IMG/VR virus record: IMGVR_UViG_3300020477_001008 | Span: 62,001 to 126,000 of that record | DNA length: 64,000 nucleotides | Direction: 5' to 3' (one strand) | Part shown: positions 6,001 through 33,950 of the stretch, piece by piece | Layout: every line of letters starts with the position of its first letter | How positions within the stretch are numbered: the first letter of the stretch is position 1 | Program-made: the position numbers and the translations under genes | The notes under the pieces: generated by a model | Database searches by the model: none | What the model was told of the DNA's origin: nothing | The model's input: the letters and a program-made list of their open reading frames with translations, nothing else

Positions 6001-7874
6001 GTACCAACTGTATAACCAAAAATTTCATTTCCTGTAAATGTTGATGAACTGTAAACACTAGTATTTCCTAAATCAATACCATTTGTATCATATAAATTAA
6101 ATTTAGGTGATTTGTTTATTCCTGTTTTTTGTTGTCCTAATTTCCATTCGTAACCAGTCCAGTAATATTCTTTACCTCCATTACTACCACCAAGTCTTAT
6201 AGTAACTTTATCATTGTCTTTTATTTTAAGTTCTGTTCCAGCATAATAAGTTGAGTCATCTAATGCTCTTAATTTAATTACACCACCTACAAATTTTACT
6301 TCATAAATTGATGACGACGCATCAAATGTACTAGACTTAACGTCCCAACCAGTGTCAGGAGTACCGTCACCGTCCTTATCGTAGTCCCAAGGATCAGTAT
6401 TTGCATCCCAGGTAACTAAATCTGTTTGCGAATTTGGATTTACAAATAAAACTTTATAACCTTCTACTAATAATATATCATCAACTCTATATGATGCTTG
6501 ATCTTCTATATCACTAATAGTTGCTGTTGATTCAAGAACATCAACAGTAGTAACGTGTTCAGAACCATAATTGTATAATTCAATATCTTTATTAAATTCA
6601 ATAATTGGTCTTTGACCTTTTCTAGCTTGTTCTAATTGAAATGATGTTTCTCTTAAGAGTGTAGTTGAATCAAAATATCCACCATCCCAGCCTCTAATAG
6701 CATCTGTTATAGAATCAAATGGATGAAACTCAGGAACTTCTTCTTGATAAGTTCTGTAATTTGTAATATTGTCTTTATGCACCCAGCCGTTTGTTCTTGA
6801 CCAAGGATTTTTATCTTTGCAACCTCTATTGATTGTAATATAATCTGCTGTAGCTACATCAGGTATAGTATCGTAACGTTCACTATCAAAACCTTTAGTA
6901 GTATCTGTTTGTGCTATTGTATCTGCTCTGTCCCAAGGTATAAATGTTTCTTTCAAAAACAATTCAGTTTCAACATCTGATGTTTCAACTAATGATATAC
7001 CTTCTTTTGAACCAACACTTTCTACAAAAACTTTTTTATCTTTATAAGTTGTACCAACTAGTGAAGAATCACTAAATTGTATTAACATACCAGAGCTGAG
7101 TGTTACACCATTGGGAGAAGTATAAGATTTTGAACCAATAATATTGTTAGGATCAACTCTATGATTGACAGTTATTTTATCTCCAGTAACAACGTTAATT
7201 GAACTGGTGGCAAATGATAAATTTAAACCTGTGGACTCATAATCGGCTGTTGCGACCCCATTAACTTCTACTATGTCATTGGGAGCGATTGAGTATGTTA
7301 ACACGAACGTTTTTGAGTTTGCAACTGACTCAAACGATTCAACCAAACCTCCTATAACAATAGCAGGTACGTTTAAATCTAAACTTGGATACCAATAGTA
7401 ATTTTCATAATTTATAAACTTATCATAATCTATTGGTGCGGAAAATGTATAATGCTTTTGTTCAAATAATCTATTTTGATCAATTGTTTTACCATTTTCA
7501 CTATCTATATAATTTAATATTTCACTATAAAAAACAGAATCTCTTAAATTTTTACTATCTGGATCTTTAATGATTCCAGCTGTTTCTAATTGATACGTTT
7601 TTCTATTTTTAATTGTTTCTGTTTTATAATTGTCTTTAGCTGGTCTATAAAATACATCAGATTTCCTACCAATGTATTCTGTAACTCTAGTATCATTTGC
7701 TTTACTAAAAGCTTGTTCAACTGTACCATCAAAGAAGTTTTTTAACTTTTCGTTTTGTAAAATTTCAGGTAAGAAACTTATAGCCTTAGCTTTATCGTCA
7801 GTTGTTGAAACTGAATTGCTAACACTTGAATTTGCATTAGATGAATTGAATTTTATTTCATCATCATAAGCCAT
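1..7874 (-). CDS. Giant baseplate wedge/structural protein (T4 gp7-like position), >2600 aa, runs off the left edge of the window
   Basis: ATG at 7874 just after the gp6-like stop reads MAYDDEIKFNSS...ISFLPEILQNEKLKNFFDGTVEQAFSK. The same frame reads ...HPLYTYKDVRLATRNNGIDT at positions 62-3. The ORF track lists no terminated minus-strand ORF here, consistent with one open frame to the edge. Gly/Thr-rich beta repeats near 600-1200. Confidence 0.8.
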   Translation of the reverse strand, partial: MAYDDEIKFNSSNANSSVSNSVSTTDDKAKAISFLPEILQNEKLKNFFDGTVEQAFSKANDTRVTEYIGRKSDVFYRPAKDNYKTETIKNRKTYQLETAGIIKDPDSKNLRDSVFYSEILNYIDSENGKTIDQNRLFEQKHYTFSAPIDYDKFINYENYYWYPSLDLNVPAIVIGGLVESFESVANSKTFVLTYSIAPNDIVEVNGVATADYESTGLNLSFATSSINVVTGDKITVNHRVDPNNIIGSKSYTSPNGVTLSSGMLIQFSDSSLVGTTYKDKKVFVESVGSKEGISLVETSDVETELFLKETFIPWDRADTIAQTDTTKGFDSERYDTIPDVATADYITINRGCKDKNPWSRTNGWVHKDNITNYRTYQEEVPEFHPFDSITDAIRGWDGGYFDSTTLLRETSFQLEQARKGQRPIIEFNKDIELYNYGSEHVTTVDVLESTATISDIEDQASYRVDDILLVEGYKVLFVNPNSQTDLVTWDANTDPWDYDKDGDGTPDTGWDVKSSTFDASSSIYEVKFVGGVIKLRALDDSTYYAGTELKIKDNDKVTIRLGGSNGGKEYYWTGYEWKLGQQKTGINKSPKFNLYDTNGIDLGNTSVYSSSTFTGNEIFGYTVGTGTNDTHLGFPLTYTDYTSLSTIQFKNYLNSETNGPAGFKYYKKYDYKNILQDTFEYKIIVQKASGTTGNKFYIDNIEQQNLILIRGNKYIFDIDDSSVTSRGYSDAYHPFLMSITENGSHASGVSYNTGIKYFHNDIEVTEAVYHSATFDNATVTKRKIEFTPTAGTPDQLYYYCKNHSGMGGSIRIVNNNVTNLTDGTVTTHNNEWAAVSTKSKQCLVQEFDVADEVSNELFLLESIIAGDDTVRVFINNKEKLQGTDYEIQKNQFIKLTTPAIDTDHILVKFKSFDTRDLYKAYYEVPKNLTNNALNSDVVTYDYGDLLNHFSGGVANQKGLTGLALGNNNYRDTEQDLTLSENILQHDAPFLKLASHVNSDDRDIIKSLRLAETDYVRFKYKFLNKILDVARRNDVTSWTDTKLVDTALAEINQNKKPNENWAYSLMLSYGDAKQTNTTTITTANKTWSSDTKNWAIQDYQNVLTDSSAGGLVTSYAYSPVNDKDSKSLYVYNNDKLLVMNQDYVITNATDNRIVFIGDNKPEVGDKVRVDFFDKKQPVFIPPTPSKLGIYQTFIPSEIVDKDSFNKGEQTFIQGHDGSLNLKFYDDRDRALLELEKRIFNDIENKFIDPDYTAPLSYESLVSNYFNTKDYSYLEFNQIFRAHIYRWMTFNDVNWQKNHPVLVSETDWRTWNWKSITNIKDTATPGHWRGIYKKFYGTDRPHLTPWEMLGFSIKPTWWDDTYSWTETDKRNKLISDVENGIIRYGRRENFKDLSYTKRANIYRRDGFSTYLPVDFQGDLQSPKDIGLCSREPNRVEAHFHWSIGDIAPAEKAFYMSSTMPFALMSALFVMKPTQFTELMFDTLNIDNSNINKLQKFDKNTGKRHTNNVYVHRETANTSIAVGTGYQQYISERLINQNKKPDILYGGVIRNITPQLAHKQGAFIDFGSYKCQAEAYSPTSKRTSIYIPDTNINHLLHISPSVQNATYSAIIIEKTARGWSVHGYDIGKNYFRTNVSLETGPSVPVQVGGKYLDIPYYQPNQSLVLGDYILYEGTYYKVKEAHTTGNSFDPTKFLSVAKPPMEGGASVTYYRASKENETVDVEYGKEFTTKQEVFDFIVNYGRYLESQGWIFDSINTDIQETYNWLYSAKEFLFWSLGNWPAESILAVSPAANKVKFKPLNGVVASVEDVIGSSYSILDKDGKPIDPSTTTIIRDGSTVKITSDEKRPIYFVNVYAREIEHITIFDNVTTFKDVIYDPALSIRQPRLKQTLLRTNDWNGKLEANGYLINTEKGIISNFETAASDVTTYLDIDKTTNNEQLNKAGLHTIGFQNRESLENLEIVDESQTRFYQGFVRQKGSRNSVDKILRTDIINERQEINLYEYYAFKVGEFGGTEINQSMEFRLDPTKIKTNPQVVKFLPRIDNVVTTDIITDDIITIDADDSLNWTKKPTGSKVSDVIWPTRAESFDLPTAGYVHINDTNFQALEKANLKTQYGNTVASNTDVAIGSTTWVAKDDNGDWNVYRLTDTNHGIESVITTNPLTVSMNETAGKLVTTANATFEAVLPDHKNADASTITTTTYGTKTFQLSLTDQVIEKTINFTDFGGANANVSVANVADGVSAMVVTTAGSGYSVGDTIEADGNGGTSASGTVATINGSGGITSITLTNPGGAYYGEPGNVSIKTGGSDSAGSSAVIRFKGNNPTYQINTTLSNASTPFQYGETITQANTGATGKVINVYTDGTSTILHIYDHTNTFDTTNQITGGTGGASTTGSHTVTARSGSAYGDSTFGAILNLTINKGGSNYVSPTMTISGTSPATGVVSASSGVINKAYVENGSYGYRKEFSDNPTIGIVVKDTITDSDNKYVDFTDQLIKPDSIANVQIVINTAFDGSNPQFDIGTTATPNSLLSNQSLSTNAVATSFGTPITDRANATLRIRFATTGSTTGTAKISVNYKKAIYNVFDLPENDVVAATTVSAYSSTFFNGSNKHPLYTYKDVRLATRNNGIDT

Positions 7875-13850: not shown

Positions 13851-15056
13851 ATGAGCAGTAAAAAACCGTTGGTGTGCCAACTTGGTATGGCTGGAGTTAA
13901 TTTCAAACATAACAGAGTTGATCTTTGTTATAGGTCAACAAGTGGTACAACTAAAAAACATACAAGTATTGTAGATGCAATCAATGACGAAGAACTTTGT
14001 TCTCAAAGATTGCAATTGTTAAATGGTGACTGGCCAACAGCTTGTTATGATTGTGAGTATATGGAAAAATCTGGTGCTAACAGTTATAGGCAAAGAATAA
14101 AGCTCGATGAACAAAAACCAGATAGTTATTTTACAGATAATATAGATCCCAAAACAGGTAAAATTAAAAATCTTAAAAGAATAGAATTTAGATTTGATAA
14201 TGTTTGCAACTATGCTTGTAGGCATTGTTCAGCAGAATATAGTTCAACTTTAGAAAAAATTATAAAACAAAATCCAGATTTATTAGAGTTTGACGAAACA
14301 GATTTACATAAATTAGGACCAAGTTATGCTACTAGATTAGAAAATTTAAATGAAATAGAACAATTTATAAAAGATGATACAATTGAAATAGAAATTACAG
14401 GTGGAGAACCTTTTTTCCAAAATAGCTTTTATAATTGTTTAGAAAAACTTCAACCATTTGCTGACCGTATAAATTTTATTGTAACAACAAATGGAAGTAT
14501 AGCAGGTAAGTTTAAAAAATATGATGTTAAAGGATTACTTAAAAATTTCAAAGAAGTATATCTAAAAGTCAGTTTAGATGGATCAAAATCTTTTTATAAT
14601 TATTTTAGAGAAGGTGGCAATTGGGATACAGTAATAGCAAATATAAAATCTTTTAGAGAACTACCAAATGTTAGGATAGGTCCAATAGTAACTATATCTA
14701 ATATGCAGGCGGCTAGATTACCTGAAGTATATAAAGATTATTTTGAACTTGATCCTAATCCAAGAAACTTTGAAGCTGGGGAAGTTATTCATCCTAATAT
14801 GTTAAATCCTGTGCATTTACCAAATGCACTTAAACAACGATACCTTAAAGAATGGTTAGAGTTTAGGAATAGTTTAACTGATACAGAACACGCAGATCGT
14901 ATAGCCAATTTTGCAGTTCATATGTTTAAAACAGAACAACGTGATGAACTTGCTTGGAAACAATTTTGTTCTTATACAGATAAACTAGATAGAGTTCATA
15001 ACAAAAAAGTTTTTGATTATTTTCCTGAATGGGAAGAATTTTGGTATAAGTCTTAA
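13851..15056 (+). CDS. Radical SAM protein with an extra N-terminal Cys cluster (twitch/SPASM-like)
   Basis: CNYACRHC (CxxxCxxC), TGGEPF, TTNGS, VSLDG; N-terminal C..C..CxxC; probable start ATG 13851, 5 nt after TAAATA. Confidence 0.85.
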   Translation: MSSKKPLVCQLGMAGVNFKHNRVDLCYRSTSGTTKKHTSIVDAINDEELCSQRLQLLNGDWPTACYDCEYMEKSGANSYRQRIKLDEQKPDSYFTDNIDPKTGKIKNLKRIEFRFDNVCNYACRHCSAEYSSTLEKIIKQNPDLLEFDETDLHKLGPSYATRLENLNEIEQFIKDDTIEIEITGGEPFFQNSFYNCLEKLQPFADRINFIVTTNGSIAGKFKKYDVKGLLKNFKEVYLKVSLDGSKSFYNYFREGGNWDTVIANIKSFRELPNVRIGPIVTISNMQAARLPEVYKDYFELDPNPRNFEAGEVIHPNMLNPVHLPNALKQRYLKEWLEFRNSLTDTEHADRIANFAVHMFKTEQRDELAWKQFCSYTDKLDRVHNKKVFDYFPEWEEFWYKS

Positions 15057-21909: not shown

Positions 21910-22914
21910 ATGTTTAAAAAAGCGGCCTGTTTTACGGATATTCACTTTGGCTTAAAGAATAATAGTCGTCAGCATAATAACGACTGTGAAAACTTTACCA
22001 AATGGTTTATAGAAGAAGCGAAAAAGTTTGGAGCAGAAACTTGCATCTTCTTAGGAGATTGGCATCACCACAGATCCTCAATCAACATTAGTACACTCAA
22101 TTATTCTATCTCAAATCTCAAACGTCTGAGTGATAATTTTGAGCAAGTATATTTTATCGTAGGAAATCACGATTTATTTTATCGTGATAAACGTGAAATA
22201 TCTTCTGTGGTGTTTGCCAATGAAATTCCAAAAATAAAAGTAGTAAACGAAATCCTAGTAAAGGATGATGTTGCTATTGTACCTTGGTTAATTGGAAACG
22301 AATGGAAAAAGATACAAAAAATAAAAGCCAAGTATATGTTTGGACACTTTGAATTGCCAAACTTTAAAATGAATGCAATGGTAGAGATGCCTGATCACGG
22401 AGAAATACAAGCCAGTCACTTTGGCAATATTGAAAAAGTGTTCACTGGACATTTTCATAAAAGACAGCATCAAGGAAACATAAGCTACATTGGAAATCCA
22501 TTTGCACACAATTATTCAGATGCGTGGGACAATGATAGAGGTTGTATGTTTTTGGAATGGGATAAAGAACCACAATATAAAATATGGGCAGATGGACCCA
22601 AGTATAGAATTTTACCATTAAGCAAATTGCTAGAAGCACCAGATGATTATTTAGAAGCTGAATGTAATGTAAGAGTTAAAATTGATATGGACATTAGCTA
22701 CGAAGAAGCTAACTTTATTAAAGAAAACTTTCAGAACACATATCAGTTAAGAGAAATAAGTTTATTGCCTTATAAAGAAATAGAAGAAGAAATGGAGTTC
22801 CAAGGAGAAATATCATTTAAATCAGTTGATGAAATTGTGTTGGATCAATTAGCTAAAGTTGAAAGTGATACTTTTGACAATAGTGTTTTAATAGAGATTT
22901 ATAATAGATTATGA
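21910..22914 (+). CDS. Recombination endonuclease, gp47 (Mre11/SbcD-like)
   Basis: DIHFG, GDWHH, GNHD, GHFH metallophosphoesterase motifs. Confidence 0.9.
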   Translation: MFKKAACFTDIHFGLKNNSRQHNNDCENFTKWFIEEAKKFGAETCIFLGDWHHHRSSINISTLNYSISNLKRLSDNFEQVYFIVGNHDLFYRDKREISSVVFANEIPKIKVVNEILVKDDVAIVPWLIGNEWKKIQKIKAKYMFGHFELPNFKMNAMVEMPDHGEIQASHFGNIEKVFTGHFHKRQHQGNISYIGNPFAHNYSDAWDNDRGCMFLEWDKEPQYKIWADGPKYRILPLSKLLEAPDDYLEAECNVRVKIDMDISYEEANFIKENFQNTYQLREISLLPYKEIEEEMEFQGEISFKSVDEIVLDQLAKVESDTFDNSVLIEIYNRL

Positions 22915-24692
22915 TAAAGTTAAAAAGCTTAACAATTAAAAACTTTATGAGTGTGGGTGCCGCTACGCAGGTAGTAAAACTAGATCAACCTGGACTAACT
23001 CTAGTGTTAGGGAATAACTTAGATTTAGGTGGCGAAGGCTCACGAAATGGTACTGGTAAAACTACTATAATAAATGCATTAAGTTTTGTACTGTTTGGAG
23101 ATGCAATAACAAACATCAAACGTGATAATTTAATTAATAAAACCAATCAAAAAAATATGTTTGTGTCGTGTGAGTTTGAAGTAAACGGACACAGCTATAG
23201 AGTAGAACGTGGTCGTAAGCCAAATCACTTTAAGTTCATATGCGATGACCAAGTGGTTAACGAAAAGGATACCGACGAAGCACAAGGCGAAAACAGATTA
23301 ACACAAGACGAAATCAATCGTATATTTGGTATGAGCCACGGCTTGTTTAAACATCTAGTTGCACTTAACACTTATAATATGCCGTTCTTGGGTATGAAGC
23401 CCACAGAACAACGAGAGCTTATTGAAGAGCTATTGGGTATAACACAATTAAGTGATAAAGCAGATAGGCTAAAAGAACAAGTACGTTTAACTAAAGCGGA
23501 TATTACTAACGAAGAAGCTAGAATAGATGCTGTTAAGAAAAGCAACGAACGTATAGAAGAAACTATTAGAAAGTTTAAGATTAAAAGTACAGCTTGGCAA
23601 GAAGACAAAGAAAAACAAATAAAGCAGTTGGATCAAGCAATTACTGAATTAAAACAAACAGACATAGATAAAGAACTAGAACAGCACAAAGCACTAGCAC
23701 AATGGAAAGAGAAGTCACAAGAGCTTACTACACTTAACAAACAGCTAGATTATGATGTACGTGAAGAACAATCATTGGAAACGACCCTTGAGAATTTGAG
23801 GGAAGAGTTGAAGAGCCTTGAGGAGGAAGTATGCCCTACGTGTAAACAGAACTTGCACGACGTCAAGGACCACGAAAAAATCGCCGCAAATACAAAAAAT
23901 AATATAACGCATACAGAAGAAAAACACATACACATACAAAAAAATATGACACATACAAAAAATCGCATACACACACTCGGCGATATTGGACCTAAACCTG
24001 AAACATTTTATCAAGATATAGACAAAGCATATGGGCATAAACAGAATTTAAGTTCTTTACAACAAGATTATGATAGACTTAAAGCAGAAGAAAATCCGCA
24101 CACGGAACAAATTGAAACTTTACAGAGTAAAAATATTGAAGAATTAGATTATACTATGATGAATAATTTAACTAAACTTAAAGAACACCAAGAGTTTTTA
24201 TATAGACTATTAACAAGTAAAGATTCATTTATTAGAAAGAAAATTATAGATCAAAATTTAAACTACTTAAATTCAAGACTTAATGGATACCTTACAGATT
24301 TAGGTTTACCACACGAAGTTATTTTCCAGAGTGATTTAGGTGTAGAAATTACAGAGCTAGGAAGAGAGTTAGATTTTGATAATTTAAGTAGAGGTGAAAG
24401 AAACAGATTAATATTAGGATTAAGTTGGGCGTTTAGAGATATATACGAGTCTACTAACGCACCTATTAACTTATTGTTTATAGATGAATTAATAGATAGT
24501 GGTATGGATACTCAAGGTGTTGAGTCTTCAATGGCTATATTGAAAAAACTAACACGAGAAAGACAGAAAAATGTATTCTTAATTTCTCACAAAGATGAAT
24601 TAACTGGCAGAGTTAATTCTATAATGAATGTAGTAAAAGAGAATGGATTTACTTCGTTTGGCGAGGACTTTGAGGTTGTTTCTATACACTAA
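22911..24692 (+). CDS. Recombination ATPase, gp46 (Rad50/SbcC-like)
   Basis: Walker A NGTGKTT, coiled coil with CPTC zinc hook, LSRGE signature, LLFIDE, ISH. Confidence 0.92.
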   Translation: MIKLKSLTIKNFMSVGAATQVVKLDQPGLTLVLGNNLDLGGEGSRNGTGKTTIINALSFVLFGDAITNIKRDNLINKTNQKNMFVSCEFEVNGHSYRVERGRKPNHFKFICDDQVVNEKDTDEAQGENRLTQDEINRIFGMSHGLFKHLVALNTYNMPFLGMKPTEQRELIEELLGITQLSDKADRLKEQVRLTKADITNEEARIDAVKKSNERIEETIRKFKIKSTAWQEDKEKQIKQLDQAITELKQTDIDKELEQHKALAQWKEKSQELTTLNKQLDYDVREEQSLETTLENLREELKSLEEEVCPTCKQNLHDVKDHEKIAANTKNNITHTEEKHIHIQKNMTHTKNRIHTLGDIGPKPETFYQDIDKAYGHKQNLSSLQQDYDRLKAEENPHTEQIETLQSKNIEELDYTMMNNLTKLKEHQEFLYRLLTSKDSFIRKKIIDQNLNYLNSRLNGYLTDLGLPHEVIFQSDLGVEITELGRELDFDNLSRGERNRLILGLSWAFRDIYESTNAPINLLFIDELIDSGMDTQGVESSMAILKKLTRERQKNVFLISHKDELTGRVNSIMNVVKENGFTSFGEDFEVVSIH

Positions 24693-24773: not shown

Positions 24774-24811
24774 TCTCATAAATACTATAAAAATTGAGGA
24801 TAATATATAGT

Positions 24812-25624
24812 ATGTTAATTAGAAAAAAATATCAATTACCTACAATGTGGAAATTCAACAAGAAGTTTGACATTAAAAAACTTCAAGAAGAAGCTTTAAA
24901 ACTAGGTAACAGCTACGGTGACGTAATGGAAACTAACAAAGCATTATGTTCAAATAATCACGAATTAGTTATGAGTGTTTACAAACACTTTAAACAAATT
25001 AATTTAACTGAATTTGATCCTACTGCTCCTGCACCAACTGTTGAAAGTTGTGAAGCACTTGGTAAAACTGCTGGTACAGGTGATGAGTCAATTGGTAGAA
25101 TTGCAAAGTATAAATTGAAATCAAGACGTGGTGAATCTTTAGATCCAGCACTTAATGAACACAATTATAATACTCCAACAGAGCAATATAAAGGAACTTA
25201 CTTTCAAGAAGTTGTAAATTCATTTAATGCTGATGCTATTAGAGTTAGACTTGTTAGATTAGATCCAGGTAAAACACTTACACCACATATTGATTATGAT
25301 CCAACTTATGCAGTAAGAGTTATTGTTCCTATCTTTGCAGAGAAAGAAGCAACAAATTATTTTTGGCGTAAAGGTAAAGAAGAAGCATATCATTTAGAAC
25401 CAGATGGGTCAGCATACTTTTTAAATATTGGTTTCACTCATACTGTAGTTAATTCAGGTAGCACACCTAGAATTAGTTTAATGTTTAGTTTAAAAAATCA
25501 ATCAGACTTGCAAGAAATCCCAGATGCTGATTGGAATGAAAATAATAATATGGGTGAGCTACGTATTAATAATAATTATAAAACACAAAAGGCACTAGCA
25601 GATGCCCAACAATTGGCAGTTTAA
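24812..25624 (+). CDS. Aspartyl/asparaginyl beta-hydroxylase-like Fe(II)/2OG oxygenase
   Basis: RVRLVRLDPG...PHIDYD (HxD)...HTVVNSG.TPR. Confidence 0.75.
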   Translation: MLIRKKYQLPTMWKFNKKFDIKKLQEEALKLGNSYGDVMETNKALCSNNHELVMSVYKHFKQINLTEFDPTAPAPTVESCEALGKTAGTGDESIGRIAKYKLKSRRGESLDPALNEHNYNTPTEQYKGTYFQEVVNSFNADAIRVRLVRLDPGKTLTPHIDYDPTYAVRVIVPIFAEKEATNYFWRKGKEEAYHLEPDGSAYFLNIGFTHTVVNSGSTPRISLMFSLKNQSDLQEIPDADWNENNNMGELRINNNYKTQKALADAQQLAV

Positions 25625-25949
25625 AACTGAAATAAAAGAATCTGAAATACACGGCCACGGCAGGTTTGCTATGGAAGATATTCCTAAAGGGAAAACAGTT
25701 GTAACATTAGAAGGTCCTGCTTTACCAAAAGAACAAGCACCAAGAAAAATGCCAGTAAGTGATACACACAATATGAATTGCGAGGATACATTTGTTAATC
25801 ACAATGATGATGCCAACCTTACATTAGTAGATACTAAAATTACTATAACTGTTGAAAAAACATTTGTGTCTACAAAGAAGATTAAAAAAGGTGCTGAACT
25901 TACAATGAACTACGAAGAATTTGCAAGAGGCAAAAAGTTTTTATTCTAA
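25602..25949 (+). CDS. SET-domain protein (putative lysine methyltransferase)
   Basis: SEIHGHGRFA.EDIPKG, FVNH, IKKGAELTMNY SET motifs. Confidence 0.8.
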   Translation: MPNNWQFKTEIKESEIHGHGRFAMEDIPKGKTVVTLEGPALPKEQAPRKMPVSDTHNMNCEDTFVNHNDDANLTLVDTKITITVEKTFVSTKKIKKGAELTMNYEEFARGKKFLF

Positions 25950-26059: not shown

Positions 26060-26189
26060 TTTTACTTTCAATAAATTTTGCGTAATATTTCGTCAAAGGA
26101 TTATTTGGCTGATAACCAAATGGCTCTGACTGTGATTTTTTACGTTTTTTTGAAAGTTTTTTACGGGTTCTCTTTTTCTGACTCTGCAT
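26049..26189 (-). CDS. 46-aa very basic peptide (not in ORF track)
   Basis: MQSQKKRTRKKLSKKRKKSQSEPFGYQPNNPLTKYYAKFIESKTKI*; overlaps the end of the upstream oxygenase gene. Confidence 0.4.
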   Translation of the reverse strand: MQSQKKRTRKKLSKKRKKSQSEPFGYQPNNPLTKYYAKFIESKTKI

Positions 26190-26865
26190 CAAAATTATAT
26201 TTATCTTTCCAGCCCATATTTGCAAAAGGCCAGCCAGTAATTACAGCACGACATCCTGGTTTAGCATTTCTAACAGGGTTAACAAAGTGAGCAGATCCTA
26301 CTCTAAATAATACACAAGAGTTTCTTTTTGGTTTTATTGCTAAAGGTCCTGCAAGGTAAGGTTGTGTTTCTAGTTTTTCTTTAAACTGTTCCCAGTTTCC
26401 TCTTTCTTCTGGGTATGTATCAAAATGATCCATTAACATAATTTCATTAGGAAATACTAGTTCACCACCTTCTTCTGTAGTTAGATAATGTACAAAAACA
26501 AAGTCACCATAAATGTCTCTTCTTTCAGTATGTACGTTGTATATGCTTTGTGGGTTAAAAGTTTTTGTAGTAAATTGTAATACATTTTTAGGATTTATAT
26601 CTTGTATTAGTATTGGCTTATATACTTCTTCGAGAACTTCATTTAGTTTTGTAATGATTTGTACAACAAGTTTACTATTTTCGTGTATATTATATTTGAT
26701 ATGATTATAGTTGTAATAAGATTTACTTATTATATGTGGTTGTTCGTTACCATCTAATTCTTTTGTGTCTGAATTTTCTATATTTTTTAAAACGTCATCA
26801 ATTAATTCTTCTTCAACAAAATTTTCAGTATACCAGACTTCGTTTATGATTCTTTCTTCCCACAT
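26161..26865 (-). CDS. Fe(II)/2OG dioxygenase (prolyl-hydroxylase-like)
   Basis: HTE (HxE), YL..EEGGELVFP, KPKRNSCVLF...SAH.V..., R.VITGW. Confidence 0.75.
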   Translation of the reverse strand: MWEERIINEVWYTENFVEEELIDDVLKNIENSDTKELDGNEQPHIISKSYYNYNHIKYNIHENSKLVVQIITKLNEVLEEVYKPILIQDINPKNVLQFTTKTFNPQSIYNVHTERRDIYGDFVFVHYLTTEEGGELVFPNEIMLMDHFDTYPEERGNWEQFKEKLETQPYLAGPLAIKPKRNSCVLFRVGSAHFVNPVRNAKPGCRAVITGWPFANMGWKDKYNFDAESEKENP

Positions 26866-27462
26866 CTAAATATGTTCCTGTGTTCTTATATGAGCGAATG
26901 CTTCTACTAATACTTCAATGGCTTCATCTTCTGTATATCCTCTGCTTTGCAAATAAAACAAATGATCTTCATCTAATGCTCCTATTGTGCAACCGTGTGT
27001 ACAAATAACATCATCATTGTTAATATCTAATTCTGGTTTTGCAAAAGCATCTGATTCATTATCTAATAAAATGTTTTTGTTTAACATATGACTTTCGCAT
27101 TTTACTACATCTTTTGGTACAGTAATTTTTCCTTCAAAAGAACTTATACCTTTTTTATTAACAAATCTAAAATCTTGATTACATTTTGATTTACTGCCTT
27201 TATGTACAACATTAGTAATTAAATTAGTTTTCTTTTTTGTATTTTTAAAAAAACCATAAAGTTCACAAGAAGAATTTTCGCCTAGCTCAACATTAATTTT
27301 TGTATCGCTATCTGCTTTGCCTTTAGCTTCAAAAAATAAACAAGCTTTTGCGTTTGGTTTTATTTTAAAATTTAAATTATTGATATCAGTTATATTGATT
27401 TTTGTTTCTAATTCTTTATCAATAATATAATTATTTTCTATCATTATTAAACCCTTGCTCAT
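26866..27462 (-). CDS. sufD: Short SufD/SufB-family Fe-S assembly protein
   Basis: KPELDINNDDVICTHGCTIG.LDEDHLFYLQSRG..E.EA...LVEAF is the SufBD C-terminal signature. Confidence 0.8.
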   Translation of the reverse strand: MSKGLIMIENNYIIDKELETKINITDINNLNFKIKPNAKACLFFEAKGKADSDTKINVELGENSSCELYGFFKNTKKKTNLITNVVHKGSKSKCNQDFRFVNKKGISSFEGKITVPKDVVKCESHMLNKNILLDNESDAFAKPELDINNDDVICTHGCTIGALDEDHLFYLQSRGYTEDEAIEVLVEAFAHIRTQEHI

Positions 27463-28120
27463 CTATGGTATCAAGTAATGTTACATCACCAGTTCTGTTT
27501 ATTTTGCCATCTTGCAAAATATGTACATAAGTTGGGTTCAAGCTTCTTAATACAGATGAATTATGACTAATAACAATCCATCCAAACTTATCTTTGTTTT
27601 CAGTAATTAATTCTTTAACAATTTTTAATGCATCTACATCAAGTCCTGTATCGAGTTCATCAAGTATTACAAGTTTAGGATTAATATGTAACAGTTGTAA
27701 TATTTCGTTTTTCTTTTTCTCTCCACCTGATGCACCATCATTAAAATGTCTTTGAGCCCATCCGGATTGTAATTTTAATCTTTCAATGTCACTTAAATAT
27801 TTTTCATATTGTTTAGAAAATTGACTTACTAATTTATAATTTGTTATACCTGGTATACTAGGAGGAGATTGAAAGCTCATAAACAAACCAGAATTTGCTC
27901 TTTCAGTTACATCTAAATCAATTAATTCATTGTTGTTTAGTTTAATTGAACCAGTTGTTGCATATTGTTCTTTACCAACTATTGCATTTGCTAAACTTGA
28001 TTTGCCTGATCCATTAGGTCCTATTAAGGCGTGAAGTTCCCCTTGCTTAACATTTAAGTTAACGCCTTTAATGATTTCGTTATCATCTACTTTTACTTTT
28101 ATATCTTTTAATTCTAACAT
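27431..28120 (-). CDS. sufC: Fe-S assembly ABC ATPase SufC
   Basis: GELHALIGPNGSGKSSL, LFMSFQSP, SGGEKKKNEILQ, LDELDTGLDVDAL. Confidence 0.9.
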   Translation of the reverse strand: MLELKDIKVKVDDNEIIKGVNLNVKQGELHALIGPNGSGKSSLANAIVGKEQYATTGSIKLNNNELIDLDVTERANSGLFMSFQSPPSIPGITNYKLVSQFSKQYEKYLSDIERLKLQSGWAQRHFNDGASGGEKKKNEILQLLHINPKLVILDELDTGLDVDALKIVKELITENKDKFGWIVISHNSSVLRSLNPTYVHILQDGKINRTGDVTLLDTIDEQGFNNDRK

Positions 28121-28887
28121 TAATGACAATCTTCCGGCTTTGGTTCTTGATGTTTTTCAGCATCAAAGTAATAGTTAAAATTACAATGCTGATCTAACCC
28201 ATCTATAAGTTCTTTGGTAGCATAAGGCCAACCTGTTACTACTGGTCTTGCATTTTCTTTTACTTCTCCTTCAAGAGATGTAACGTAATGTGCTGATCCA
28301 ATAGCAAATATTACACATTTATTATATTTTGGTTTTATAGTAATATCGTTTAGATAACGCATTGGAAAACCTTTTGACTCAACTAGTTTTATATTTTCTT
28401 CCCAACGATTTTTTTGTTTTGGATATTTTTCTAAATGTTTTTCACAACCTTCTTTACTCGGAAATATTAAATGTCCACCTTTTTCATCTGAAAGGAAATG
28501 CATAAAAGCATAAGGTCCATATTTGTTAATTGGTTCTGTATGTAAATCATACCAACCTCTTTTGCTAAAGCTTTTTGTAAACAACTGTAACCCTTCTAAG
28601 TTTGTTTTAGGTACAGGTGTTTCTGTTAATGGCTGTAGCACTTCATTTATTCTATCCATATATAAATCAATTAATATTTTATTTTTATGTATATCTGTTC
28701 TATGTACAGTATAATTGTAAGTTGTAGCATTAACCCCAGAGTTTCTAAAGTTTGGTAGTATTGCTTCTCCTGGCTCTAGTTCAGTTGTTCCTGCTTGAAA
28801 CATTTCTCTTTTAATATGTTCAACAGTTTCTTCATTAAGAAAATCATCTATTTCCCAAATTTCGTTTTTAACTATTTCGTTCCACAT
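28120..28887 (-). CDS. Fe(II)/2OG dioxygenase, paralog of 26161-26865
   Basis: HTE, FLSDEKGGHLIFP, KPKYNKCVIF.IGSAH, RPVVTGWP. Confidence 0.75.
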   Translation of the reverse strand: MWNEIVKNEIWEIDDFLNEETVEHIKREMFQAGTTELEPGEAILPNFRNSGVNATTYNYTVHRTDIHKNKILIDLYMDRINEVLQPLTETPVPKTNLEGLQLFTKSFSKRGWYDLHTEPINKYGPYAFMHFLSDEKGGHLIFPSKEGCEKHLEKYPKQKNRWEENIKLVESKGFPMRYLNDITIKPKYNKCVIFAIGSAHYVTSLEGEVKENARPVVTGWPYATKELIDGLDQHCNFNYYFDAEKHQEPKPEDCH

Positions 28888-30683
28888 TATCTTTCGTGTC
28901 CTATTGCTATTACATTTGCATTTTTCATTCTTGCATCAGTACCATACATACTCATATCAAACTCTTTTTTCCATTCGTTAACGTCAGATTTAACAACATC
29001 TAAAGGATATATTGTGGACATCTCGTCAACTATACTTTCTTTATGATGCCAAATTTGATATATTTCATCAGAACGTAAACATCTACTAAAATAAAGATAT
29101 GTAGCCAAATCTTGTACTTCAGTTCTTTCTTCATCACAAAATATTTTTGTAATGATATCTCTATTTTTTCCAACCAACCATTTCATAAGTGGCATATTAT
29201 CTAAGTTATTATAAAACATTTTTATTTGATCTGCAACCGATGTACCACGTTCCACTAGGTATTTAATAGAATTTGATAGGGTTCTTGCATTATAAAAGTT
29301 ATGGTAAAACCACCAATAATCAAACATTTTCAATAATTCTGGTAAATCATATGATGAACATTGGTGCATAATTTCTATTTCTTCAAACTCATATGTACTT
29401 CTTTCATCTCTAAATTCTGGTTCGTTGTGTAATTTTTTATATCCAAGTCCACTAAAACTATAAGGAAATGCAAGTATTTTAGATTTAACTTTATATTCTT
29501 TTCTAAATTGTTTTGTGTATATTTCTGTATTTGGTACAAGATTTAAAAAATAAGAACGCATAAAATCAATACCAAGTTCATAATCTTTGTTTAAACTGTA
29601 TAACCAACTGTCTGCTGTTTCACCTGGTAATGCAATAATCATTTCACTTGTAACAGGCAATCCTTTTGATTTAAAACTGTCAATTAACGGCAATAACTTA
29701 TCATTATTAATGTTTGCTCTGTTAATAACTTTTAATGTTTGTTTGGCGTGTGTTTGAAAACTTACTTTTAGGTTACGTTGGTCTGCATCTAAATTGTTAT
29801 GTATAATATCTATAATTTCTGGCAACCACTTACTGCCATTCTTTGCAAGTCCTGAGTATGATATCTTAGGATTATTACCTGTTGCTTCTTTGTTTGCTTT
29901 CATCTTCTTTACAACATCTAAATCTCTAGGTAGCATACCAAAGTTAGCATCAAGTATTTCAAGCTCTGCTATGTTTGTGTGCTTGTATAAGAAGTCTAAT
30001 TGTGCATTAACAGGATCCATATCAAACTTTGTAACTTTAGATCTTGCTTGTCCACCCCAATCACAAAATGCACACTTAAAAGGACAACCACGATTAGTTT
30101 CAAAAGATGCTTTAACTCTTTTTTCTTTTGCAAGTATAGAATCAAATGTACCGTCTAAGTATGGTGTAGGCATTTCATAAGTTTCAATTTGATATAATTT
30201 ACGTCCTACTTCAACATTATTCCAACCAATACCAAATCCTCCATCGTGAGTTTGCATTGGTGCATCAATATTTTTTAAAAAATTGCTAACTAATTTTTCT
30301 CCTGGACCTACCCAAAATATATCTATGTAAGGATGTTCTTTTGCAAACTGTTCTGCAAGTTCTGGGTCTTCAGGTATATTAGGTCCACCATACATAGCAA
30401 TACCGTTTGGATTTACATCTTTGTAATGACTCATTAATTGATCGTTGTATGCTTGATTCCAAACATAACAAGTCAAACCAAATATATCAATGTTTTTAAA
30501 TTGTTCTGTGTATTCTTCTACAGGCTTAAATTTATATAATGGTTCGTTAAATGTGTAGTTTTCTTTTATTTGTGGAATTTTATTACAATAGCTTATGAGA
30601 CAAGCCGCGGCATATGGTAGCCACGTTTCGTGAATTACAGATATGGTTCCTAATTGTACTGTTTTCATAATGCTATTGTCCAA
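28887..30683 (-). CDS. B12-binding-domain radical SAM protein
   Basis: N-terminal GLTCYVWN...YGGP...GPGE cobalamin-binding-like fold; ETNRGCPFKCAFCDW; DANFG; LPGET. Confidence 0.85.
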   Translation of the reverse strand: MDNSIMKTVQLGTISVIHETWLPYAAACLISYCNKIPQIKENYTFNEPLYKFKPVEEYTEQFKNIDIFGLTCYVWNQAYNDQLMSHYKDVNPNGIAMYGGPNIPEDPELAEQFAKEHPYIDIFWVGPGEKLVSNFLKNIDAPMQTHDGGFGIGWNNVEVGRKLYQIETYEMPTPYLDGTFDSILAKEKRVKASFETNRGCPFKCAFCDWGGQARSKVTKFDMDPVNAQLDFLYKHTNIAELEILDANFGMLPRDLDVVKKMKANKEATGNNPKISYSGLAKNGSKWLPEIIDIIHNNLDADQRNLKVSFQTHAKQTLKVINRANINNDKLLPLIDSFKSKGLPVTSEMIIALPGETADSWLYSLNKDYELGIDFMRSYFLNLVPNTEIYTKQFRKEYKVKSKILAFPYSFSGLGYKKLHNEPEFRDERSTYEFEEIEIMHQCSSYDLPELLKMFDYWWFYHNFYNARTLSNSIKYLVERGTSVADQIKMFYNNLDNMPLMKWLVGKNRDIITKIFCDEERTEVQDLATYLYFSRCLRSDEIYQIWHHKESIVDEMSTIYPLDVVKSDVNEWKKEFDMSMYGTDARMKNANVIAIGHER

Positions 30684-31475: not shown

Positions 31476-32609
31476 TTATGTTTGAATATGTAAGTTGGGA
31501 TCACCACTTTGTTTTTGTATTACAGTATTAGACGACTTCCATTTACCATTTTCACAACTTCTCCAACATCTACGTAACTCACGTTTTTTTGTAGTCCACG
31601 CATCAGTAATTTCTTTCCAAGCTGGCTGGTGCCAAATTTCCATTAATGAACGTGTATTAAAGTTGTTAAAATCGTTTTTGTAATGTTCTACTAGCCATTC
31701 TTCTTTTCTTGCTAATTGATGTATTGATAAATCATATTCCTCTGACAAATAACAACAAGGCCATATTCTACCTTTAGGATTCAAATACATTCTATGGTCG
31801 TCAATACCTCTGCAAGAAATACAAGTTTCTTCTTTTACTTTTAGTTGTTTAAAAACTTCTTTTTTAATCTCTTCAGTTTTCTTTGTTTTTATTTCTTCAA
31901 CTTCTTTAACTCTTTCAATTCTTTTTTCAGGTTTTTTCTTTGCAACTTTTACAGCTTCTTGATAATCTTCTTCTGGTGGTGGCTCTCTAGTTGTAACTTC
32001 AGCTGAAAAATGTGCAAATCCTAATTTTCTTGATAAGGCTTCTGCTTCTTCTACTTGGTGTTCGTTGTGATCAAATATTAACATTTTCCACTCAGCTAAT
32101 CCGCCAGCATTAATATAAGCTTCAACGTTTTGAATTAATTTGTCCCAATCAACTTTTCTTCTATATAAATGATTAGTATCTTTTAATCCATCAATAGAGA
32201 AAGTTATACGTGTTGATCCTATATCCCAATTTGATGATCCTTTGCGTTTAGATGTTTCTCCTAGATTACGCCAAAAGTCAGTTGTACGTCCTCCACCATT
32301 AGTATGAACTCCAACGTTCTTGAAATTTTCTGATGCATATTGATATAAAAATTCAAATTCAGGGTGCATTAAAGAATCGCCATAATTTCCACAGTACCAA
32401 ACATTGACTTTATCAGCTCCTTGAAATAAATCAAACTGTTCTTTCATTTTTTCTAATAAATGAGTAGGTAAATGTTCTAAAGCTAGATCTTCTATAACGT
32501 CACTTGTACCTGGCTTATGTCTAGAGCAATACGGACACCCTGCGTTACAAAAGGTCGTAGGCTCTACCTCAATCGTATGTATATGCTGTGGTTTAATTAA
32601 TGAAAACAT
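31476..32609 (-). CDS. Radical SAM protein with C-terminal SPASM/twitch domain
   Basis: CNAGCPYC, GNYGD, HTNGG, FSIDG; C-terminal C...G.IWPCC...CWRSC. Confidence 0.88.
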   Translation of the reverse strand: MFSLIKPQHIHTIEVEPTTFCNAGCPYCSRHKPGTSDVIEDLALEHLPTHLLEKMKEQFDLFQGADKVNVWYCGNYGDSLMHPEFEFLYQYASENFKNVGVHTNGGGRTTDFWRNLGETSKRKGSSNWDIGSTRITFSIDGLKDTNHLYRRKVDWDKLIQNVEAYINAGGLAEWKMLIFDHNEHQVEEAEALSRKLGFAHFSAEVTTREPPPEEDYQEAVKVAKKKPEKRIERVKEVEEIKTKKTEEIKKEVFKQLKVKEETCISCRGIDDHRMYLNPKGRIWPCCYLSEEYDLSIHQLARKEEWLVEHYKNDFNNFNTRSLMEIWHQPAWKEITDAWTTKKRELRRCWRSCENGKWKSSNTVIQKQSGDPNLHIQT

Positions 32610-32619: not shown

Positions 32620-33312
32620 TTAAGCAAATTGGATATTAAATGAAATCGGCCAATGCCCGTAGCTAGACTCTTCTTTTTCACATTTAATCACGTCAATGTT
32701 GCTAATTTTAATATTACTGTTCTGTGTTGTTAATATTTTATCTAAACTGGCATTGTAATTATTTTTATTAGTAAATGTTCCAAAGTCTTTTAAATGATTT
32801 TTTATATTTCTTTCTTTTAAACTTAAAACTTTTTGTTGTTCAATTTCGCTATCTTCAAAATGTAAATCTGTTAAAATTAATGTATTATCATCAATCATTG
32901 AAAGTAATTCTTTACCTTGTTCATAATAAATTTTATAAGGCACTCTGCCAGAATCAAAGCTATTAATCATTTCACTTTTTTGTAGTATTGGTTCTTCAGG
33001 ATCAGGATAGCAAATTGAACTATTAATAATTTTGTATTTTCCTAATTTTAATGTTTGCCAATATTGTCCTTGGGTTTCATCTGTTAGATTTTTAATATGG
33101 TAATTGAATTGCCCAACTTCTACATCTAATTTATTATTTTTATCAATAATACACAGTCCACGTTTTCCATAATTGTTAGTGTAATGATAATTGTAATCTT
33201 TATCTCTTACGTCTTTAGTAAAACGTTCTTTCCATCGTTGTAAAAAATAAATGTCACTATTGAATTGTAGTGCATCGACCTCCCCATTCCAACTAAACAT
33301 TAAAGCTTTCAT
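32620..33312 (-). CDS. Degenerate EEP (exonuclease/endonuclease/phosphatase)-fold protein
   Basis: Motif order SWN...DIYFLQR...LTDLH...LDKI...GHWP mirrors EEP SWNV/LQE/GDFN/DY/SDHxP with several catalytic residues changed. Confidence 0.45.
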   Translation of the reverse strand: MKALMFSWNGEVDALQFNSDIYFLQRWKERFTKDVRDKDYNYHYTNNYGKRGLCIIDKNNKLDVEVGQFNYHIKNLTDETQGQYWQTLKLGKYKIINSSICYPDPEEPILQKSEMINSFDSGRVPYKIYYEQGKELLSMIDDNTLILTDLHFEDSEIEQQKVLSLKERNIKNHLKDFGTFTNKNNYNASLDKILTTQNSNIKISNIDVIKCEKEESSYGHWPISFNIQFA

Positions 33313-33950
33313 TACCAATATTTACTTTGCCTGTAATAAAGTACTCTTGTAGGATCAACATTTTCTCCATTATGGCTATGTTCTATAATTGCGTTAGTAG
33401 GTTTCCATACGTATGATTCGTCAATGTAATAACTGTAAATGTATTGTAGCATATCTGATTTAGGAGAATCGTGAAACAATAGTTCTTTTTCTAAAGTTAA
33501 TTTTTTATAGTCTTCGTCATTGAACCAACTATTATCTCCTACAATATAAGTTCTTTTGTGTTGAAATAATTTATTAATTGCTTTGTCGTTTACATCGTGG
33601 GTCCAATAGTAATGTTTGAATCCATTTTCTTTTGCCCAAGCAATTTGATGTTTCATCATTTTAAATCCATAGCGACCGTGTCTATGTTTTTTAAGTATAT
33701 GATATCTACATTTTCTAATTGATTCTGGTGTACCTGTAATAAAACTTCTTTCAGCATAACTTATACTAGCAACTTCATCATTAACTAATGCTATCCAAAG
33801 ACTACTTTTTTCATCTAAACTATCTAAATCAAATTTCTTTTGAGTATATGTTCCGGCACTACCTTCTGCTTTAGCTTTTTCAAGAAATTGTTCTACTAAT
33901 TCTTTATGTGATGAATTATATTGTATTATACTTTCCATTCTCCTACCCAA
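33312..33950 (-). CDS. GNAT-like acetyltransferase
   Basis: YHILKKHRHGRYG...WAKENG resembles acetyl-CoA-binding motif A. Confidence 0.55.
   Translation of the reverse strand: MGRRMESIIQYNSSHKELVEQFLEKAKAEGSAGTYTQKKFDLDSLDEKSSLWIALVNDEVASISYAERSFITGTPESIRKCRYHILKKHRHGRYGFKMMKHQIAWAKENGFKHYYWTHDVNDKAINKLFQHKRTYIVGDNSWFNDEDYKKLTLEKELLFHDSPKSDMLQYIYSYYIDESYVWKPTNAIIEHSHNGENVDPTRVLYYRQSKYW

What the first reader, a model, noticed from the sequence alone, without database searches (positions are those of the whole stretch)
26866..28120. Minimal two-gene Suf module (SufC plus ~200-aa SufD-like) embedded among Fe-dependent enzymes
Seen: SufC is coupled to a SufBD-family protein about half the usual length that keeps the DDVxCxHG motif. 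No sufB, sufS, sufE or sufA is in the window. The pair sits in the same run of genes as two radical SAMs. Inference: a dedicated Fe-S scaffold for the phage radical SAM enzymes, either a minimal SufBC/SMS-like complex or subunits that join the host SufBCD.
Basis: partly seen in the sequence, partly recalled or inferred. Interest (0 to 1): 0.6.

Follow-up and report, generated by a model that had tools for sequence, protein, structure and literature searches.

The report
Phage SUF system with half-size SufD
The sufC plus half-length sufD pair is real, but it is one piece of a near-complete iron-sulfur cluster assembly (SUF) pathway scattered through a marine jumbo phage that also encodes 23 radical SAM enzymes; the half-size SufD is an old, conserved phage form, not a broken gene.

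Summary
A SufC ATPase (window 27431-28120, minus strand, 229 aa) overlaps a SufD-like gene (26866-27444, 192 aa). The pair sits between two 2OG-Fe(II) oxygenases and next to radical SAM genes.

The "minimal two-gene module" reading does not hold. The window is part of a 242.6-kb jumbo myovirus contig. That contig also encodes full-length SufB, SufS, SufE, a SufT-like protein and a CGFS glutaredoxin, plus 23 radical SAM proteins.

The short SufD is not a recent truncation:
- It forms one well-supported clade of 184-213 aa proteins, down to about 45% identity.
- dN/dS is 0.14-0.19.
- No close full-length relative exists among 1.84 billion representatives.
- It is the only SufD in a complete 328-kb relative.
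- A full-length SufB lies within 10 kb on every related contig examined.

It keeps SufD's dimer-interface and cluster residues (Pro347, His360) and the conserved C-terminal residues of the SufC-binding domain. It lacks the N-terminal domain and about a third of the β-helix.

Best reading: a phage SufB-SufC2-SufD(short) scaffold, fed by phage SufS/SufE, supplies clusters to the phage's radical SAM enzymes. Binding itself is not shown.

The parts
27431..28120 (-). sufC: Fe-S cluster assembly ATPase, 229 aa from the ATG at 28120 (the ORF caller's TTG start at 28129 gives 232 aa)
   Evidence: TIGR01978 scores 244.9 bits, above the cut-off of 212.8. The Walker A Lys40, Q-loop, SGGEKK signature, Walker B Asp-Glu and H-loop His all align with E. 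coli SufC K40, E171 and H203. About 17 residues of the helical subdomain are missing. The start overlaps the upstream stop codon as TAATG.
26866..27444 (-). Short sufD: 192 aa (198 aa if the ATG at 27462 is used). It comprises roughly the last six turns of the SufBD β-helix plus a short C-terminal helical domain.
   Evidence: PF01458 matches positions 63-232 of 232, E 2e-36. The AlphaFold2 model has pLDDT 92.4, with 12 strands followed by 3 helices. It superposes on E. coli SufD 2zu0_B at Z 19.5, rmsd 2.0 Å. P143, C154, H156, Y170, R174, G175 and F189 are invariant across the family and correspond to E. coli P347, C358, H360, Y374, R378, G379 and F393. dN/dS is 0.14-0.19.
28120..28887 (-). 2OG-Fe(II) oxygenase-like gene (255 aa) directly upstream of sufC
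   Evidence: PF13640 gives a weak hit (18.9 bits, below the cut-off of 27). phrog_61 2OG-Fe(II) oxygenase hits at E 1.9e-6. The gene keeps this position in relatives L007, L013, L014 and L015.
26161..26865 (-). 2OG-Fe(II) oxygenase (234 aa) directly downstream of the short sufD, with no spacer
   Evidence: PF13640 scores 32.5 bits, above the cut-off of 27. The junction reads TAG then ATG. Synteny is conserved in relatives.
28887..30683 (-). Radical SAM protein (593-598 aa) at the head of the tightly packed run
   Evidence: PF04055 scores 38.6 bits. CxxxCxxC lies at residue 195 of the 593-aa ATG-start ORF. The protein is 81-84% identical in relatives, at the same position.
31476..32609 (-). Radical SAM/SPASM protein (377 aa) in the same gene run
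   Evidence: PF04055 scores 41.5 bits and PF13186 SPASM 31.5 bits.
13851..15056 (+). A further radical SAM paralog inside the window, a likely client of the Fe-S supply
   Evidence: PF04055 scores 32.8 bits. It belongs to the network of 22 radical SAM paralogs.

Best explanation
The sufC and short sufD pair is the ATPase plus SufD half of a phage-encoded, near-complete SUF iron-sulfur cluster assembly pathway. The other parts are dispersed over the same jumbo-phage genome: SufB, SufS, SufE, a SufT-like protein and a CGFS monothiol glutaredoxin.

Proposed mechanism (inferred by homology with E. coli SufBC2D): phage SufS/SufE deliver persulfide sulfur to SufB. SufB pairs end-to-end with the shortened SufD through the retained C-terminal end of the β-helix, bringing SufB Cys405, Glu432, His433 and Glu434 together with SufD His156. 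[quoted passage not shown] The finished clusters go to the phage's 23 radical SAM enzymes, possibly by way of the glutaredoxin and SufT.

The short SufD is a stable, selected miniaturisation. It has lost the N-terminal helical domain and about a third of the β-helix, and it keeps every residue known to matter in SufD.
For: Shown:
- Family assignments of SufC and the short SufD.
- SufB, SufS, SufE, SufT-like and CGFS glutaredoxin genes on the same contig. GC content is uniform at 0.30-0.37 along the contig, so nothing suggests a chimeric join.
- The same gene set is found dispersed in a complete relative of 328,149 bp with terminal repeats. Its only SUFBD genes are SufB and a short SufD.
- A full-length SufB lies within 10 kb of the short SufD on all 19 related contigs. 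It is directly adjacent on five, and three carry an operon-like sufC, short sufD, sufS, sufE, sufT run.
- The short family is a single clade (SH-aLRT 99) under purifying selection.
- An exhaustive search shows scores falling from 211 bits at 57% identity (short forms) to 113 bits or less for the nearest full-length SufDs, which match at 45% identity or less over the C-terminal part only.
- Functional residues are retained in SufD, SufB and SufC, as listed in the review PMC6006206.
- The model is confident and superposes on E. coli SufD at Z 19.5, rmsd 2.0 Å.
- The phage has a large Fe-S demand: 23 radical SAM ORFs with CxxxCxxC here, and 22 hits in the complete relative.

Inferred: the order of steps and the subunit contacts.
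Against: - No direct evidence exists that the three phage proteins bind each other. The one complex prediction gave no verdict.
- sufB lies about 95 kb from sufC/sufD in this genome, so co-expression is not shown.
- RNA-library contigs identical to the window cover sufC and neighbouring genes but not the short sufD, and DNA carry-over cannot be excluded.
- The family carries a conserved Cys-Glu-Ser-His motif (122-125) and a periodic series of cysteines that E. coli SufD lacks. These could mean a role beyond that of canonical SufD.
- Phage SufB is 75-76% identical to SufB of marine Flavobacteriaceae and Crocinitomicaceae genomes assembled from metagenomes, so mixed phage-host complexes are plausible.
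- No SufA/IscA-type carrier gene was found on this partial contig.
Confidence: 0.7

Rival explanations
1. Hybrid complexes: phage SufC and short SufD plug into the host's SufB or SufBC2D, re-tuning or boosting the host machine rather than forming an all-phage scaffold.
For: Phage SufB is 75-76% identical to SufB of marine Flavobacteriaceae and Crocinitomicaceae metagenome-assembled genomes, so the interfaces may be compatible. sufC and sufD are separated from sufB in this genome.
Against: Every genome or contig with the short SufD also carries its own full-length SufB, often adjacent to it. Phage SufC is far from any cellular SufC, about 46-47% identical at best, which suggests long co-evolution inside phages. 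This rival does not exclude the main reading.
Confidence: 0.15
2. Stand-alone minimal scaffold: SufC2 with a short-SufD homodimer assembles clusters without SufB, in the manner of SMS (SmsCB).
For: The pair is translationally coupled. The short SufD is about the size of, or smaller than, SmsB and superposes on it at Z 16.9. The family has gained conserved Cys122, Glu123 and His125 in addition to Cys154 and His156.
Against: The SmsB model scores 28.6 bits against a cut-off of 650. The position of SufB Cys405 is Asn, and those of Glu432 and Glu434 are Thr and Gly. SufB always co-occurs with the short SufD. SufS and SufE are present, whereas the minimal SufB*/SufC system is reported to use inorganic sulfide as its sulfur source (title of preprint 10.1101/2024.03.20.586028). 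E. coli SufC2D2 is a known sub-complex, but Fe-S assembly is described on SufBC2D (PMC6006206).
Confidence: 0.07
3. Host-takeover decoy: the truncated SufD titrates host SufB or SufC and shuts down host Fe-S assembly.
For: Truncated subunits can act as dominant negatives. The N-terminal domain and part of the β-helix are missing.
Against: The cluster-ligand His and all conserved interface residues are kept under purifying selection. The phage carries the complete pathway and a large radical SAM load that needs clusters.
Confidence: 0.05
4. Recent truncation or decaying pseudogene.
For: The protein is half the usual length and scores below the TIGR01981 cut-off. Sporadic short SufD-like ORFs elsewhere branch among full-length SufDs and may be fragments or independent truncations; at least one (P0095) is a frameshift piece.
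Against: More than 50 sequence clusters of 184-213 aa span 93% to about 45% identity. They form a single clade, with dN/dS of 0.14-0.19 and a confident compact fold. No close full-length relative exists in 1.84 billion representatives.
Confidence: 0.02

Closest known systems
E. coli SufBC2D scaffold with SufS/SufE (PDB 5AWF, 2ZU0; review PMC6006206)
   Same: The same protein families and the same key residues are present:
- SufB: R226, N228, C254, Q285, W287, K303, C405, E432, H433, E434.
- SufC: K40, E171, H203.
- SufD: P347, H360.
- C-terminal SufC-binding domain of SufD: Y374, R378, G379, F393.

sufC and sufD are adjacent and coupled.
   Different: - SufD is 192 aa instead of 423. It has no N-terminal helical domain and about six β-helix turns in the model, against the nine reported for E. 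coli SufD.
- SufC is about 17 residues shorter.
- The genes are scattered over more than 190 kb of a phage genome rather than forming one operon.
- No SufA was found.
- The family has an extra conserved Cys-Glu-Ser-His motif.
SMS / minimal SUF (SmsB-SmsC, also called SufB*-SufC) of anaerobic archaea and bacteria (PDB 9H78)
   Same: It has a small β-helix scaffold subunit plus a SufC-type ATPase. The fold is similar (Z 16.9).
   Different: The SmsB model is far below its cut-off. The SufB/SmsB-type Cys at the C405 position is absent. The phage has a separate full-length SufB and also SufS/SufE.
SufB reported as an auxiliary metabolic gene in freshwater amoC-encoding jumbo phages (preprint 10.64898/2026.06.18.733297)
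   Same: A jumbo phage carries a host-like SufB.
   Different: In that preprint the searched passages name SufB as a host-like auxiliary gene. They mention no SufC, short SufD, SufS/SufE or large radical SAM complement.
PA5oct-like and related jumbo myoviruses (Pseudomonas PA5oct, Vibrio 2.275.O, Sinorhizobium Phosso, Erwinia pEa_SNUABM_19 and pEa_SNUABM_47)
   Same: The major capsid protein is 65-70% identical, and portal, sheath and baseplate genes are present.
   Different: None of the 50,697 deposited phage records carries a close relative of the short SufD (best 42% identity over 46% of the query). Their other suf matches lie in stretches annotated with bacterial housekeeping genes or in unannotated fragments.

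Membership tests
SufC (TIGR01978) | Score above the curated equivalog cut-off | tested here: met
   244.9 bits against a cut-off of 212.8.
SufC (TIGR01978) | ATPase motifs: Walker A Lys40, Walker B Glu171, H-loop His203 | tested here: met
   All three align with E. coli SufC. The residue list comes from PMC6006206.
SufD (TIGR01981 / PF01458) | SUFBD core β-helix domain | tested here: met
   PF01458 scores 126 bits against a cut-off of 27, but only profile positions 63-232 are matched. The fold superposes on SufD at Z 19.5.
SufD (TIGR01981 / PF01458) | Full-length equivalog score and N-terminal SufBD_N domain | tested here: not met
   TIGR01981 scores 134.5 bits against a cut-off of 222. There is no PF19295 hit, and the model starts directly in the β-helix.
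SufD (TIGR01981 / PF01458) | Dimer-interface and cluster residues Pro347 and His360, plus C-terminal Tyr374, Arg378, Gly379 and Phe393 | tested here: met
   P143, H156, Y170, R174, G175 and F189 are invariant in the 24-sequence family alignment.
SufD (TIGR01981 / PF01458) | Physical binding to SufC and SufB | tested here: inconclusive
   The complex prediction returned no verdict. The only indirect evidence is gene coupling and co-occurrence.
Complete SUF pathway (SufBC2D with SufS/SufE) | SufB, SufC, SufD, SufS and SufE encoded by one genome | tested here: met
   All are present in this contig and in the complete 328-kb relative. No SufA was found in this contig.
SMS minimal system (SmsB/SmsC) | SmsB model score, and SufB-type Cys at the C405 position | tested here: not met
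   NF052511 scores 28.6 bits against a cut-off of 650. Asn sits at the Cys405 position.

The most novel reading that the evidence does not exclude
The half-size SufD is not only a trimmed SufD. It has gained cysteines at the start of every second strand (C66, C94, C122, C154, spaced one helix turn apart) and a Cys-Glu-Ser-His motif next to His156. These could give it its own sulfur-relay or cluster-binding capacity. If so, SufC2 with a short-SufD dimer, or a SufB/short-SufD heterodimer with a richer ligand set, would be a new type of compact Fe-S scaffold evolved in phages to load radical SAM enzymes quickly.
Probability: 0.12. Interest if true: 0.8.

Novelty: new variant of a known kind. Interest (0 to 1): 0.62.

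Why it matters
Three points make this worth attention.

- It shows a virus carrying what looks like a whole Fe-S cluster assembly line: sulfur donor, scaffold, ATPase and carriers. The same virus carries more than twenty radical SAM enzymes. Neither feature is mentioned in the marine jumbo-phage survey or the 2026 jumbo-phage review that I checked.
- The naturally minimised SufD is a ready-made deletion experiment. Evolution has kept only the last part of the β-helix, His360 and the SufC-binding helices. That points to the part of SufD that is needed and makes the role of the N-terminal half testable.
- It gives marine virus ecology a concrete case of phage investment in iron and sulfur cofactor supply. 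The stretch occurs in marine metagenomes from 12 studies.

Tried and rejected
- Complex prediction. I submitted phage SufB residues 130-474, two copies of SufC and the short SufD. The tool's verdict was "no answer": the score did not clear the margin over the control in which SufB was replaced. It is not used as evidence for or against binding.
- Promoter and terminator scan of 24.5-36 kb. It found no more sites than in shuffled sequence, so it is uninformative in this AT-rich DNA.
- Search of deposited phage genomes. No close short SufD turned up. The suf genes of the Microcystis phage MaAM05 record sit beside panB, panC and a full sufBCDS-iscU operon, which looks like bacterial sequence. The Staphylococcus, Listeria and Enterococcus records are mostly unannotated fragments; where annotated, the match lies at a record end. 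None was used as a precedent.
- Other short SufD candidates. P0095 is a frameshift fragment from an error-prone assembly. P0498 has only full-length relatives (308-510 aa) in reference genomes, mostly Bacteroidales. Sporadic cellular short forms are therefore separate cases.
- Literature searches for a phage SUF system or a short SufD. Only SufB as an auxiliary gene in the amoC phages was found.
- RNA evidence. A metatranscriptome from the source sample holds identical contigs over sufC, the upstream oxygenase gene and the radical SAM gene. None covers the short sufD, and DNA carry-over is possible. It is not counted as proof of expression.

Full report
**What is in the window**

On the minus strand, a run of tightly packed genes extends from about 33.3 kb down to 26.2 kb:
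- a 232-aa ORF with no Pfam hit at 32620-33318;
- a radical SAM/SPASM protein of 377 aa;
- a 259-aa ORF with no Pfam hit;
- a radical SAM protein of 593-598 aa;
- a 2OG-Fe(II) oxygenase-like protein of 255 aa;
- SufC;
- a short SufD-like protein;
- a second 2OG-Fe(II) oxygenase of 234 aa.

SufC passes the curated SufC equivalog (244.9 bits against 212.8). The short protein matches only the C-terminal 170 positions of the 232-position SUFBD_core model. It scores best as SufD but stays below the full-length SufD cut-off.

The junctions are those of a translationally coupled operon:
- The upstream oxygenase gene and sufC overlap as TAATG.
- sufC and the short sufD overlap by 14 nt. This uses the ATG at 27444, which has an AAGGG seven bases upstream and gives the 192-aa length of the closest relatives.
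- The short sufD stop (TAG) is followed directly by the ATG of the next gene.

**What the window belongs to**

The window is positions 62,001-126,000 of a 242,646-bp linear virus record, estimated about 55% complete. The window itself holds portal, major head, tail sheath and baseplate genes. The major head protein is about 70% identical to that of Pseudomonas phage PA5oct and 65-68% identical to those of other jumbo myoviruses. GC content is 0.30-0.37 along the whole contig, so nothing suggests a chimeric join.

**The rest of the SUF pathway is on the same contig**

Searches of the whole contig found these genes outside the window:
- SufB: full length, 474 aa, at contig 184,856-186,280. It scores 856 bits on the SufB equivalog, above the cut-off of 717.
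- SufS: a cysteine desulfurase of 401 aa at 183,109-184,314.
- SufE: 134 aa at 173,164-173,568.
- SufT-like: a FeS_assembly_P protein of 101 aa at 196,369-196,674.
- Glutaredoxin: a CGFS-type monothiol glutaredoxin at about 5,935-6,243.

No SufA/IscA-type gene was found.

A related record of 328,149 bp has direct terminal repeats and is rated 100% complete. It carries the same set, also dispersed: SufS, SufB, SufC, short SufD, SufE, SufT and the glutaredoxin. Its only two SUFBD-family genes are SufB and a short SufD. The short form is therefore the only SufD these phages have.

**Fe-S demand**

The contig has 23 Radical_SAM matches, 17 of them above Pfam's cut-off. All 23 ORFs carry a CxxxCxxC motif, and 22 are linked as paralogs. 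The complete relative has 22 matches, and partial relatives have 1-12. This load gives a plain reason for a phage to carry its own cluster assembly line.

**The short SufD is not a recent truncation**

- A word-based search found more than 50 clusters of 184-213 aa proteins, from 93% down to about 45% identity. Some lie on contigs of up to 328 kb.
- In the 24-sequence alignment, P143, C154, H156, Y170, R174, G175 and F189 are invariant.
- dN/dS against the two nearest relatives with DNA in hand is 0.14 and 0.18.
- An exhaustive HMMER search of 1.84 billion representatives was justified because the claim rests on the absence of full-length close kin. Scores dropped sharply, from 211 bits at 57% identity (short forms) to 113 bits or less for the nearest full-length SufDs. 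Those match at 45% identity or less, over the C-terminal part only.
- In a tree, the 23 phage-type short proteins form one clade with SH-aLRT 99. Their nearest neighbour is another short protein, which is also coupled to a sufC.
- Other short SufD-like ORFs are scattered among full-length SufDs. They are fragments, independent truncations or unclear cases.

**Co-occurrence with SufB**

I examined 13 IMG/VR loci and 6 other metagenome contigs that carry the short SufD. One of the metagenome contigs is the same record as an IMG/VR locus. Every one has a full-length SufB within 10 kb, 69-76% identical to this phage's SufB. The arrangements vary:
- On five contigs, sufB is immediately followed by the short sufD.
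- Two carry sufB, a short gap, then sufC and the short sufD.
- Three carry a run of glutaredoxin, a small ORF, sufC, short sufD, sufS, sufE and sufT, with sufB 4 kb upstream.
- The window's closest relatives keep the local order: radical SAM, oxygenase, sufC, short sufD, oxygenase, then a SET-domain gene and an Asp/Asn hydroxylase-like gene on the other strand.

**Structure and residues**

The AlphaFold2 model, built from a 70-sequence alignment, has mean pLDDT 92.4. It shows twelve β-strands (residues 11-161) followed by three short helices. It superposes on:
- E. coli SufD from the SufC2D2 crystal, at Z 19.5 and rmsd 2.0 Å over all 198 residues;
- E. coli SufB, at Z 20.5;
- M. jannaschii SmsB, at Z 16.9.

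According to the SUF review (PMC6006206), SufD has a nine-turn β-helix with helical N- and C-terminal subdomains. Pro347 and His360 sit at the dimer interface, and the C-terminal helical domain binds SufC. His360 is the only SufD residue found critical in vivo. The conserved C-terminal residues are Tyr374, Arg378, Gly379, Ala385 and Phe393.

The short protein keeps all of these. It lacks the N-terminal domain and roughly three helix turns.

Phage SufB keeps R226, N228, C254, Q285, W287, K303, C405, E432, H433 and E434. Phage SufC keeps K40, E171 and H203 but is about 17 residues shorter.

Aligned to SufB, the short SufD has Asn at the Cys405 position, and Thr and Gly at the Glu432 and Glu434 positions. 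It is therefore of the SufD type, not the SufB or SmsB type. The SmsB model scores 28.6 bits against a cut-off of 650.

**Most likely mechanism**

This is inferred by homology. Phage SufS/SufE pass persulfide sulfur to SufB. SufB and the short SufD form the end-to-end heterodimer through the retained end of the β-helix. SufC binds each C-terminal domain and drives opening of the interface, where the cluster forms on SufB Cys405 and Glu434 and SufD His156. Clusters then go to the radical SAM enzymes, possibly through the CGFS glutaredoxin and SufT.

What is shown: the gene content, conservation, residues, fold and co-occurrence. What is not shown: binding, cluster formation and co-expression.

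**Origin and host hints**

Phage SufB is 75-76% identical to SufB of marine Flavobacteriaceae and Crocinitomicaceae genomes assembled from metagenomes. Phage SufC has no non-phage relative above about 47% identity. Several phage contigs carrying these genes are filed in public bins named as Euryarchaeota, Roseibacillus or Puniceicoccaceae. These look like binning errors.

**Distribution and expression**

The 4.5-kb stretch occurs in marine metagenomes from 12 studies. A metatranscriptome from the probable source sample holds six 100%-identical contigs over sufC, the upstream oxygenase gene and the radical SAM gene. None covers the short sufD, and the tool warns that DNA can be present in RNA libraries.

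**Comparison with what is known, and verdict**

The parts are all known families, and the system works like E. coli SufBC2D with SufS/SufE. Three things are new:
- the carrier, a jumbo phage with a full pathway;
- the scale of the radical SAM complement that goes with it;
- the conserved half-size SufD.

In the searchable literature I found only SufB noted as an auxiliary gene in freshwater amoC jumbo phages. Fe-S assembly and radical SAM enzymes are not mentioned in a marine jumbo-phage survey or in a 2026 review.

I rate this a new variant of a known kind, with interest 0.62.

The complex prediction gave no verdict. It is listed only under Tried and rejected.

Noticed in passing
Whole contig (G000); in the window at 13851-15056 (+), 28887-30683 (-) and 31476-32609 (-); densest at contig 198.8-220 kb: There are 23 radical SAM ORFs, each with a CxxxCxxC motif, and 22 are linked as paralogs. 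Most have an N-terminal extension of about 110-160 aa before the motif. Their substrates are unknown. A complete 328-kb relative has 22 matches.
   Followed up: partly
Short SufD residues 66, 94, 122 and 154 (window 26866-27462, minus strand): Cysteines recur at the start of every second β-strand, spaced 28, 28 and 32 residues apart (one helix turn). The series ends at C154/H156, and a conserved Cys-Glu-Ser-His motif at 122-125 is absent from E. coli SufD. It could be a structural ladder or a sulfur or metal path. No model coordinates were available to check which way the side chains point.
   Followed up: no
Contig G000 180,261-184,853 (locus L003 8261-12856), outside the window: The phage encodes ClpX, translation initiation factor IF-3, ribosomal protein bS21 and ribosomal protein bL12. 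The bL12 gene sits between sufS and sufB. The same ClpX, IF-3, S21 order recurs in distant relatives (L010-L012).
   Followed up: partly
Contig G000 about 5,935-6,243 (-), outside the window; also L010 8805-9113, close upstream of sufC (one small ORF between): This is a CGFS-type monothiol glutaredoxin, the class known as Fe-S cluster carriers. In some relatives it lies in the same run as sufC, short sufD, sufS, sufE and sufT.
   Followed up: partly
Window 24794-25949 (+): An Asp/Asn β-hydroxylase-like protein (276 aa) and a SET-domain protein (115 aa) lie on the opposite strand next to the suf pair. Both are 68-97% identical in relatives. Together with the two 2OG oxygenases, this suggests protein- or peptide-modifying chemistry.
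   Followed up: no
Window 1-7874 (-), continuing upstream of the window (contig 57,689-69,874): A single ORF of about 4,061 aa lies next to a 1,158-aa baseplate wedge gene. It was not analysed.
   Followed up: no
Window 21910-24692 (+): A 334-aa and a 593-aa gene pair, by my reading SbcD/SbcC-like (T4 gp47/gp46-type nuclease), lies just upstream of the Fe-enzyme block. No family scan was run on it.
   Followed up: no
L027 1759-3079; L046 5074-6573; L049 334-954: Other sufC plus roughly 190-206 aa SufD-like pairs lie on contigs with housekeeping genes (ThiG, CysRS, GroEL). They are unrelated to the phage clade. They may be independent miniaturisations or decaying genes in cellular genomes.
   Followed up: partly
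L026 (GenBank MW495066.1, 'Microcystis phage MaAM05', 261.8-273.9 kb): The end of this deposited phage record carries panB, panC and a full sufBCDS-iscU operon. It looks like bacterial sequence rather than phage auxiliary genes.
   Followed up: no
Proteins P0152, P0273 and P0296: Near-identical copies of the phage SufC and SufB are filed in public genome bins named Puniceicoccaceae, Euryarchaeota and Roseibacillus. These are probably jumbo-phage contigs binned into cellular genomes by mistake.
   Followed up: no
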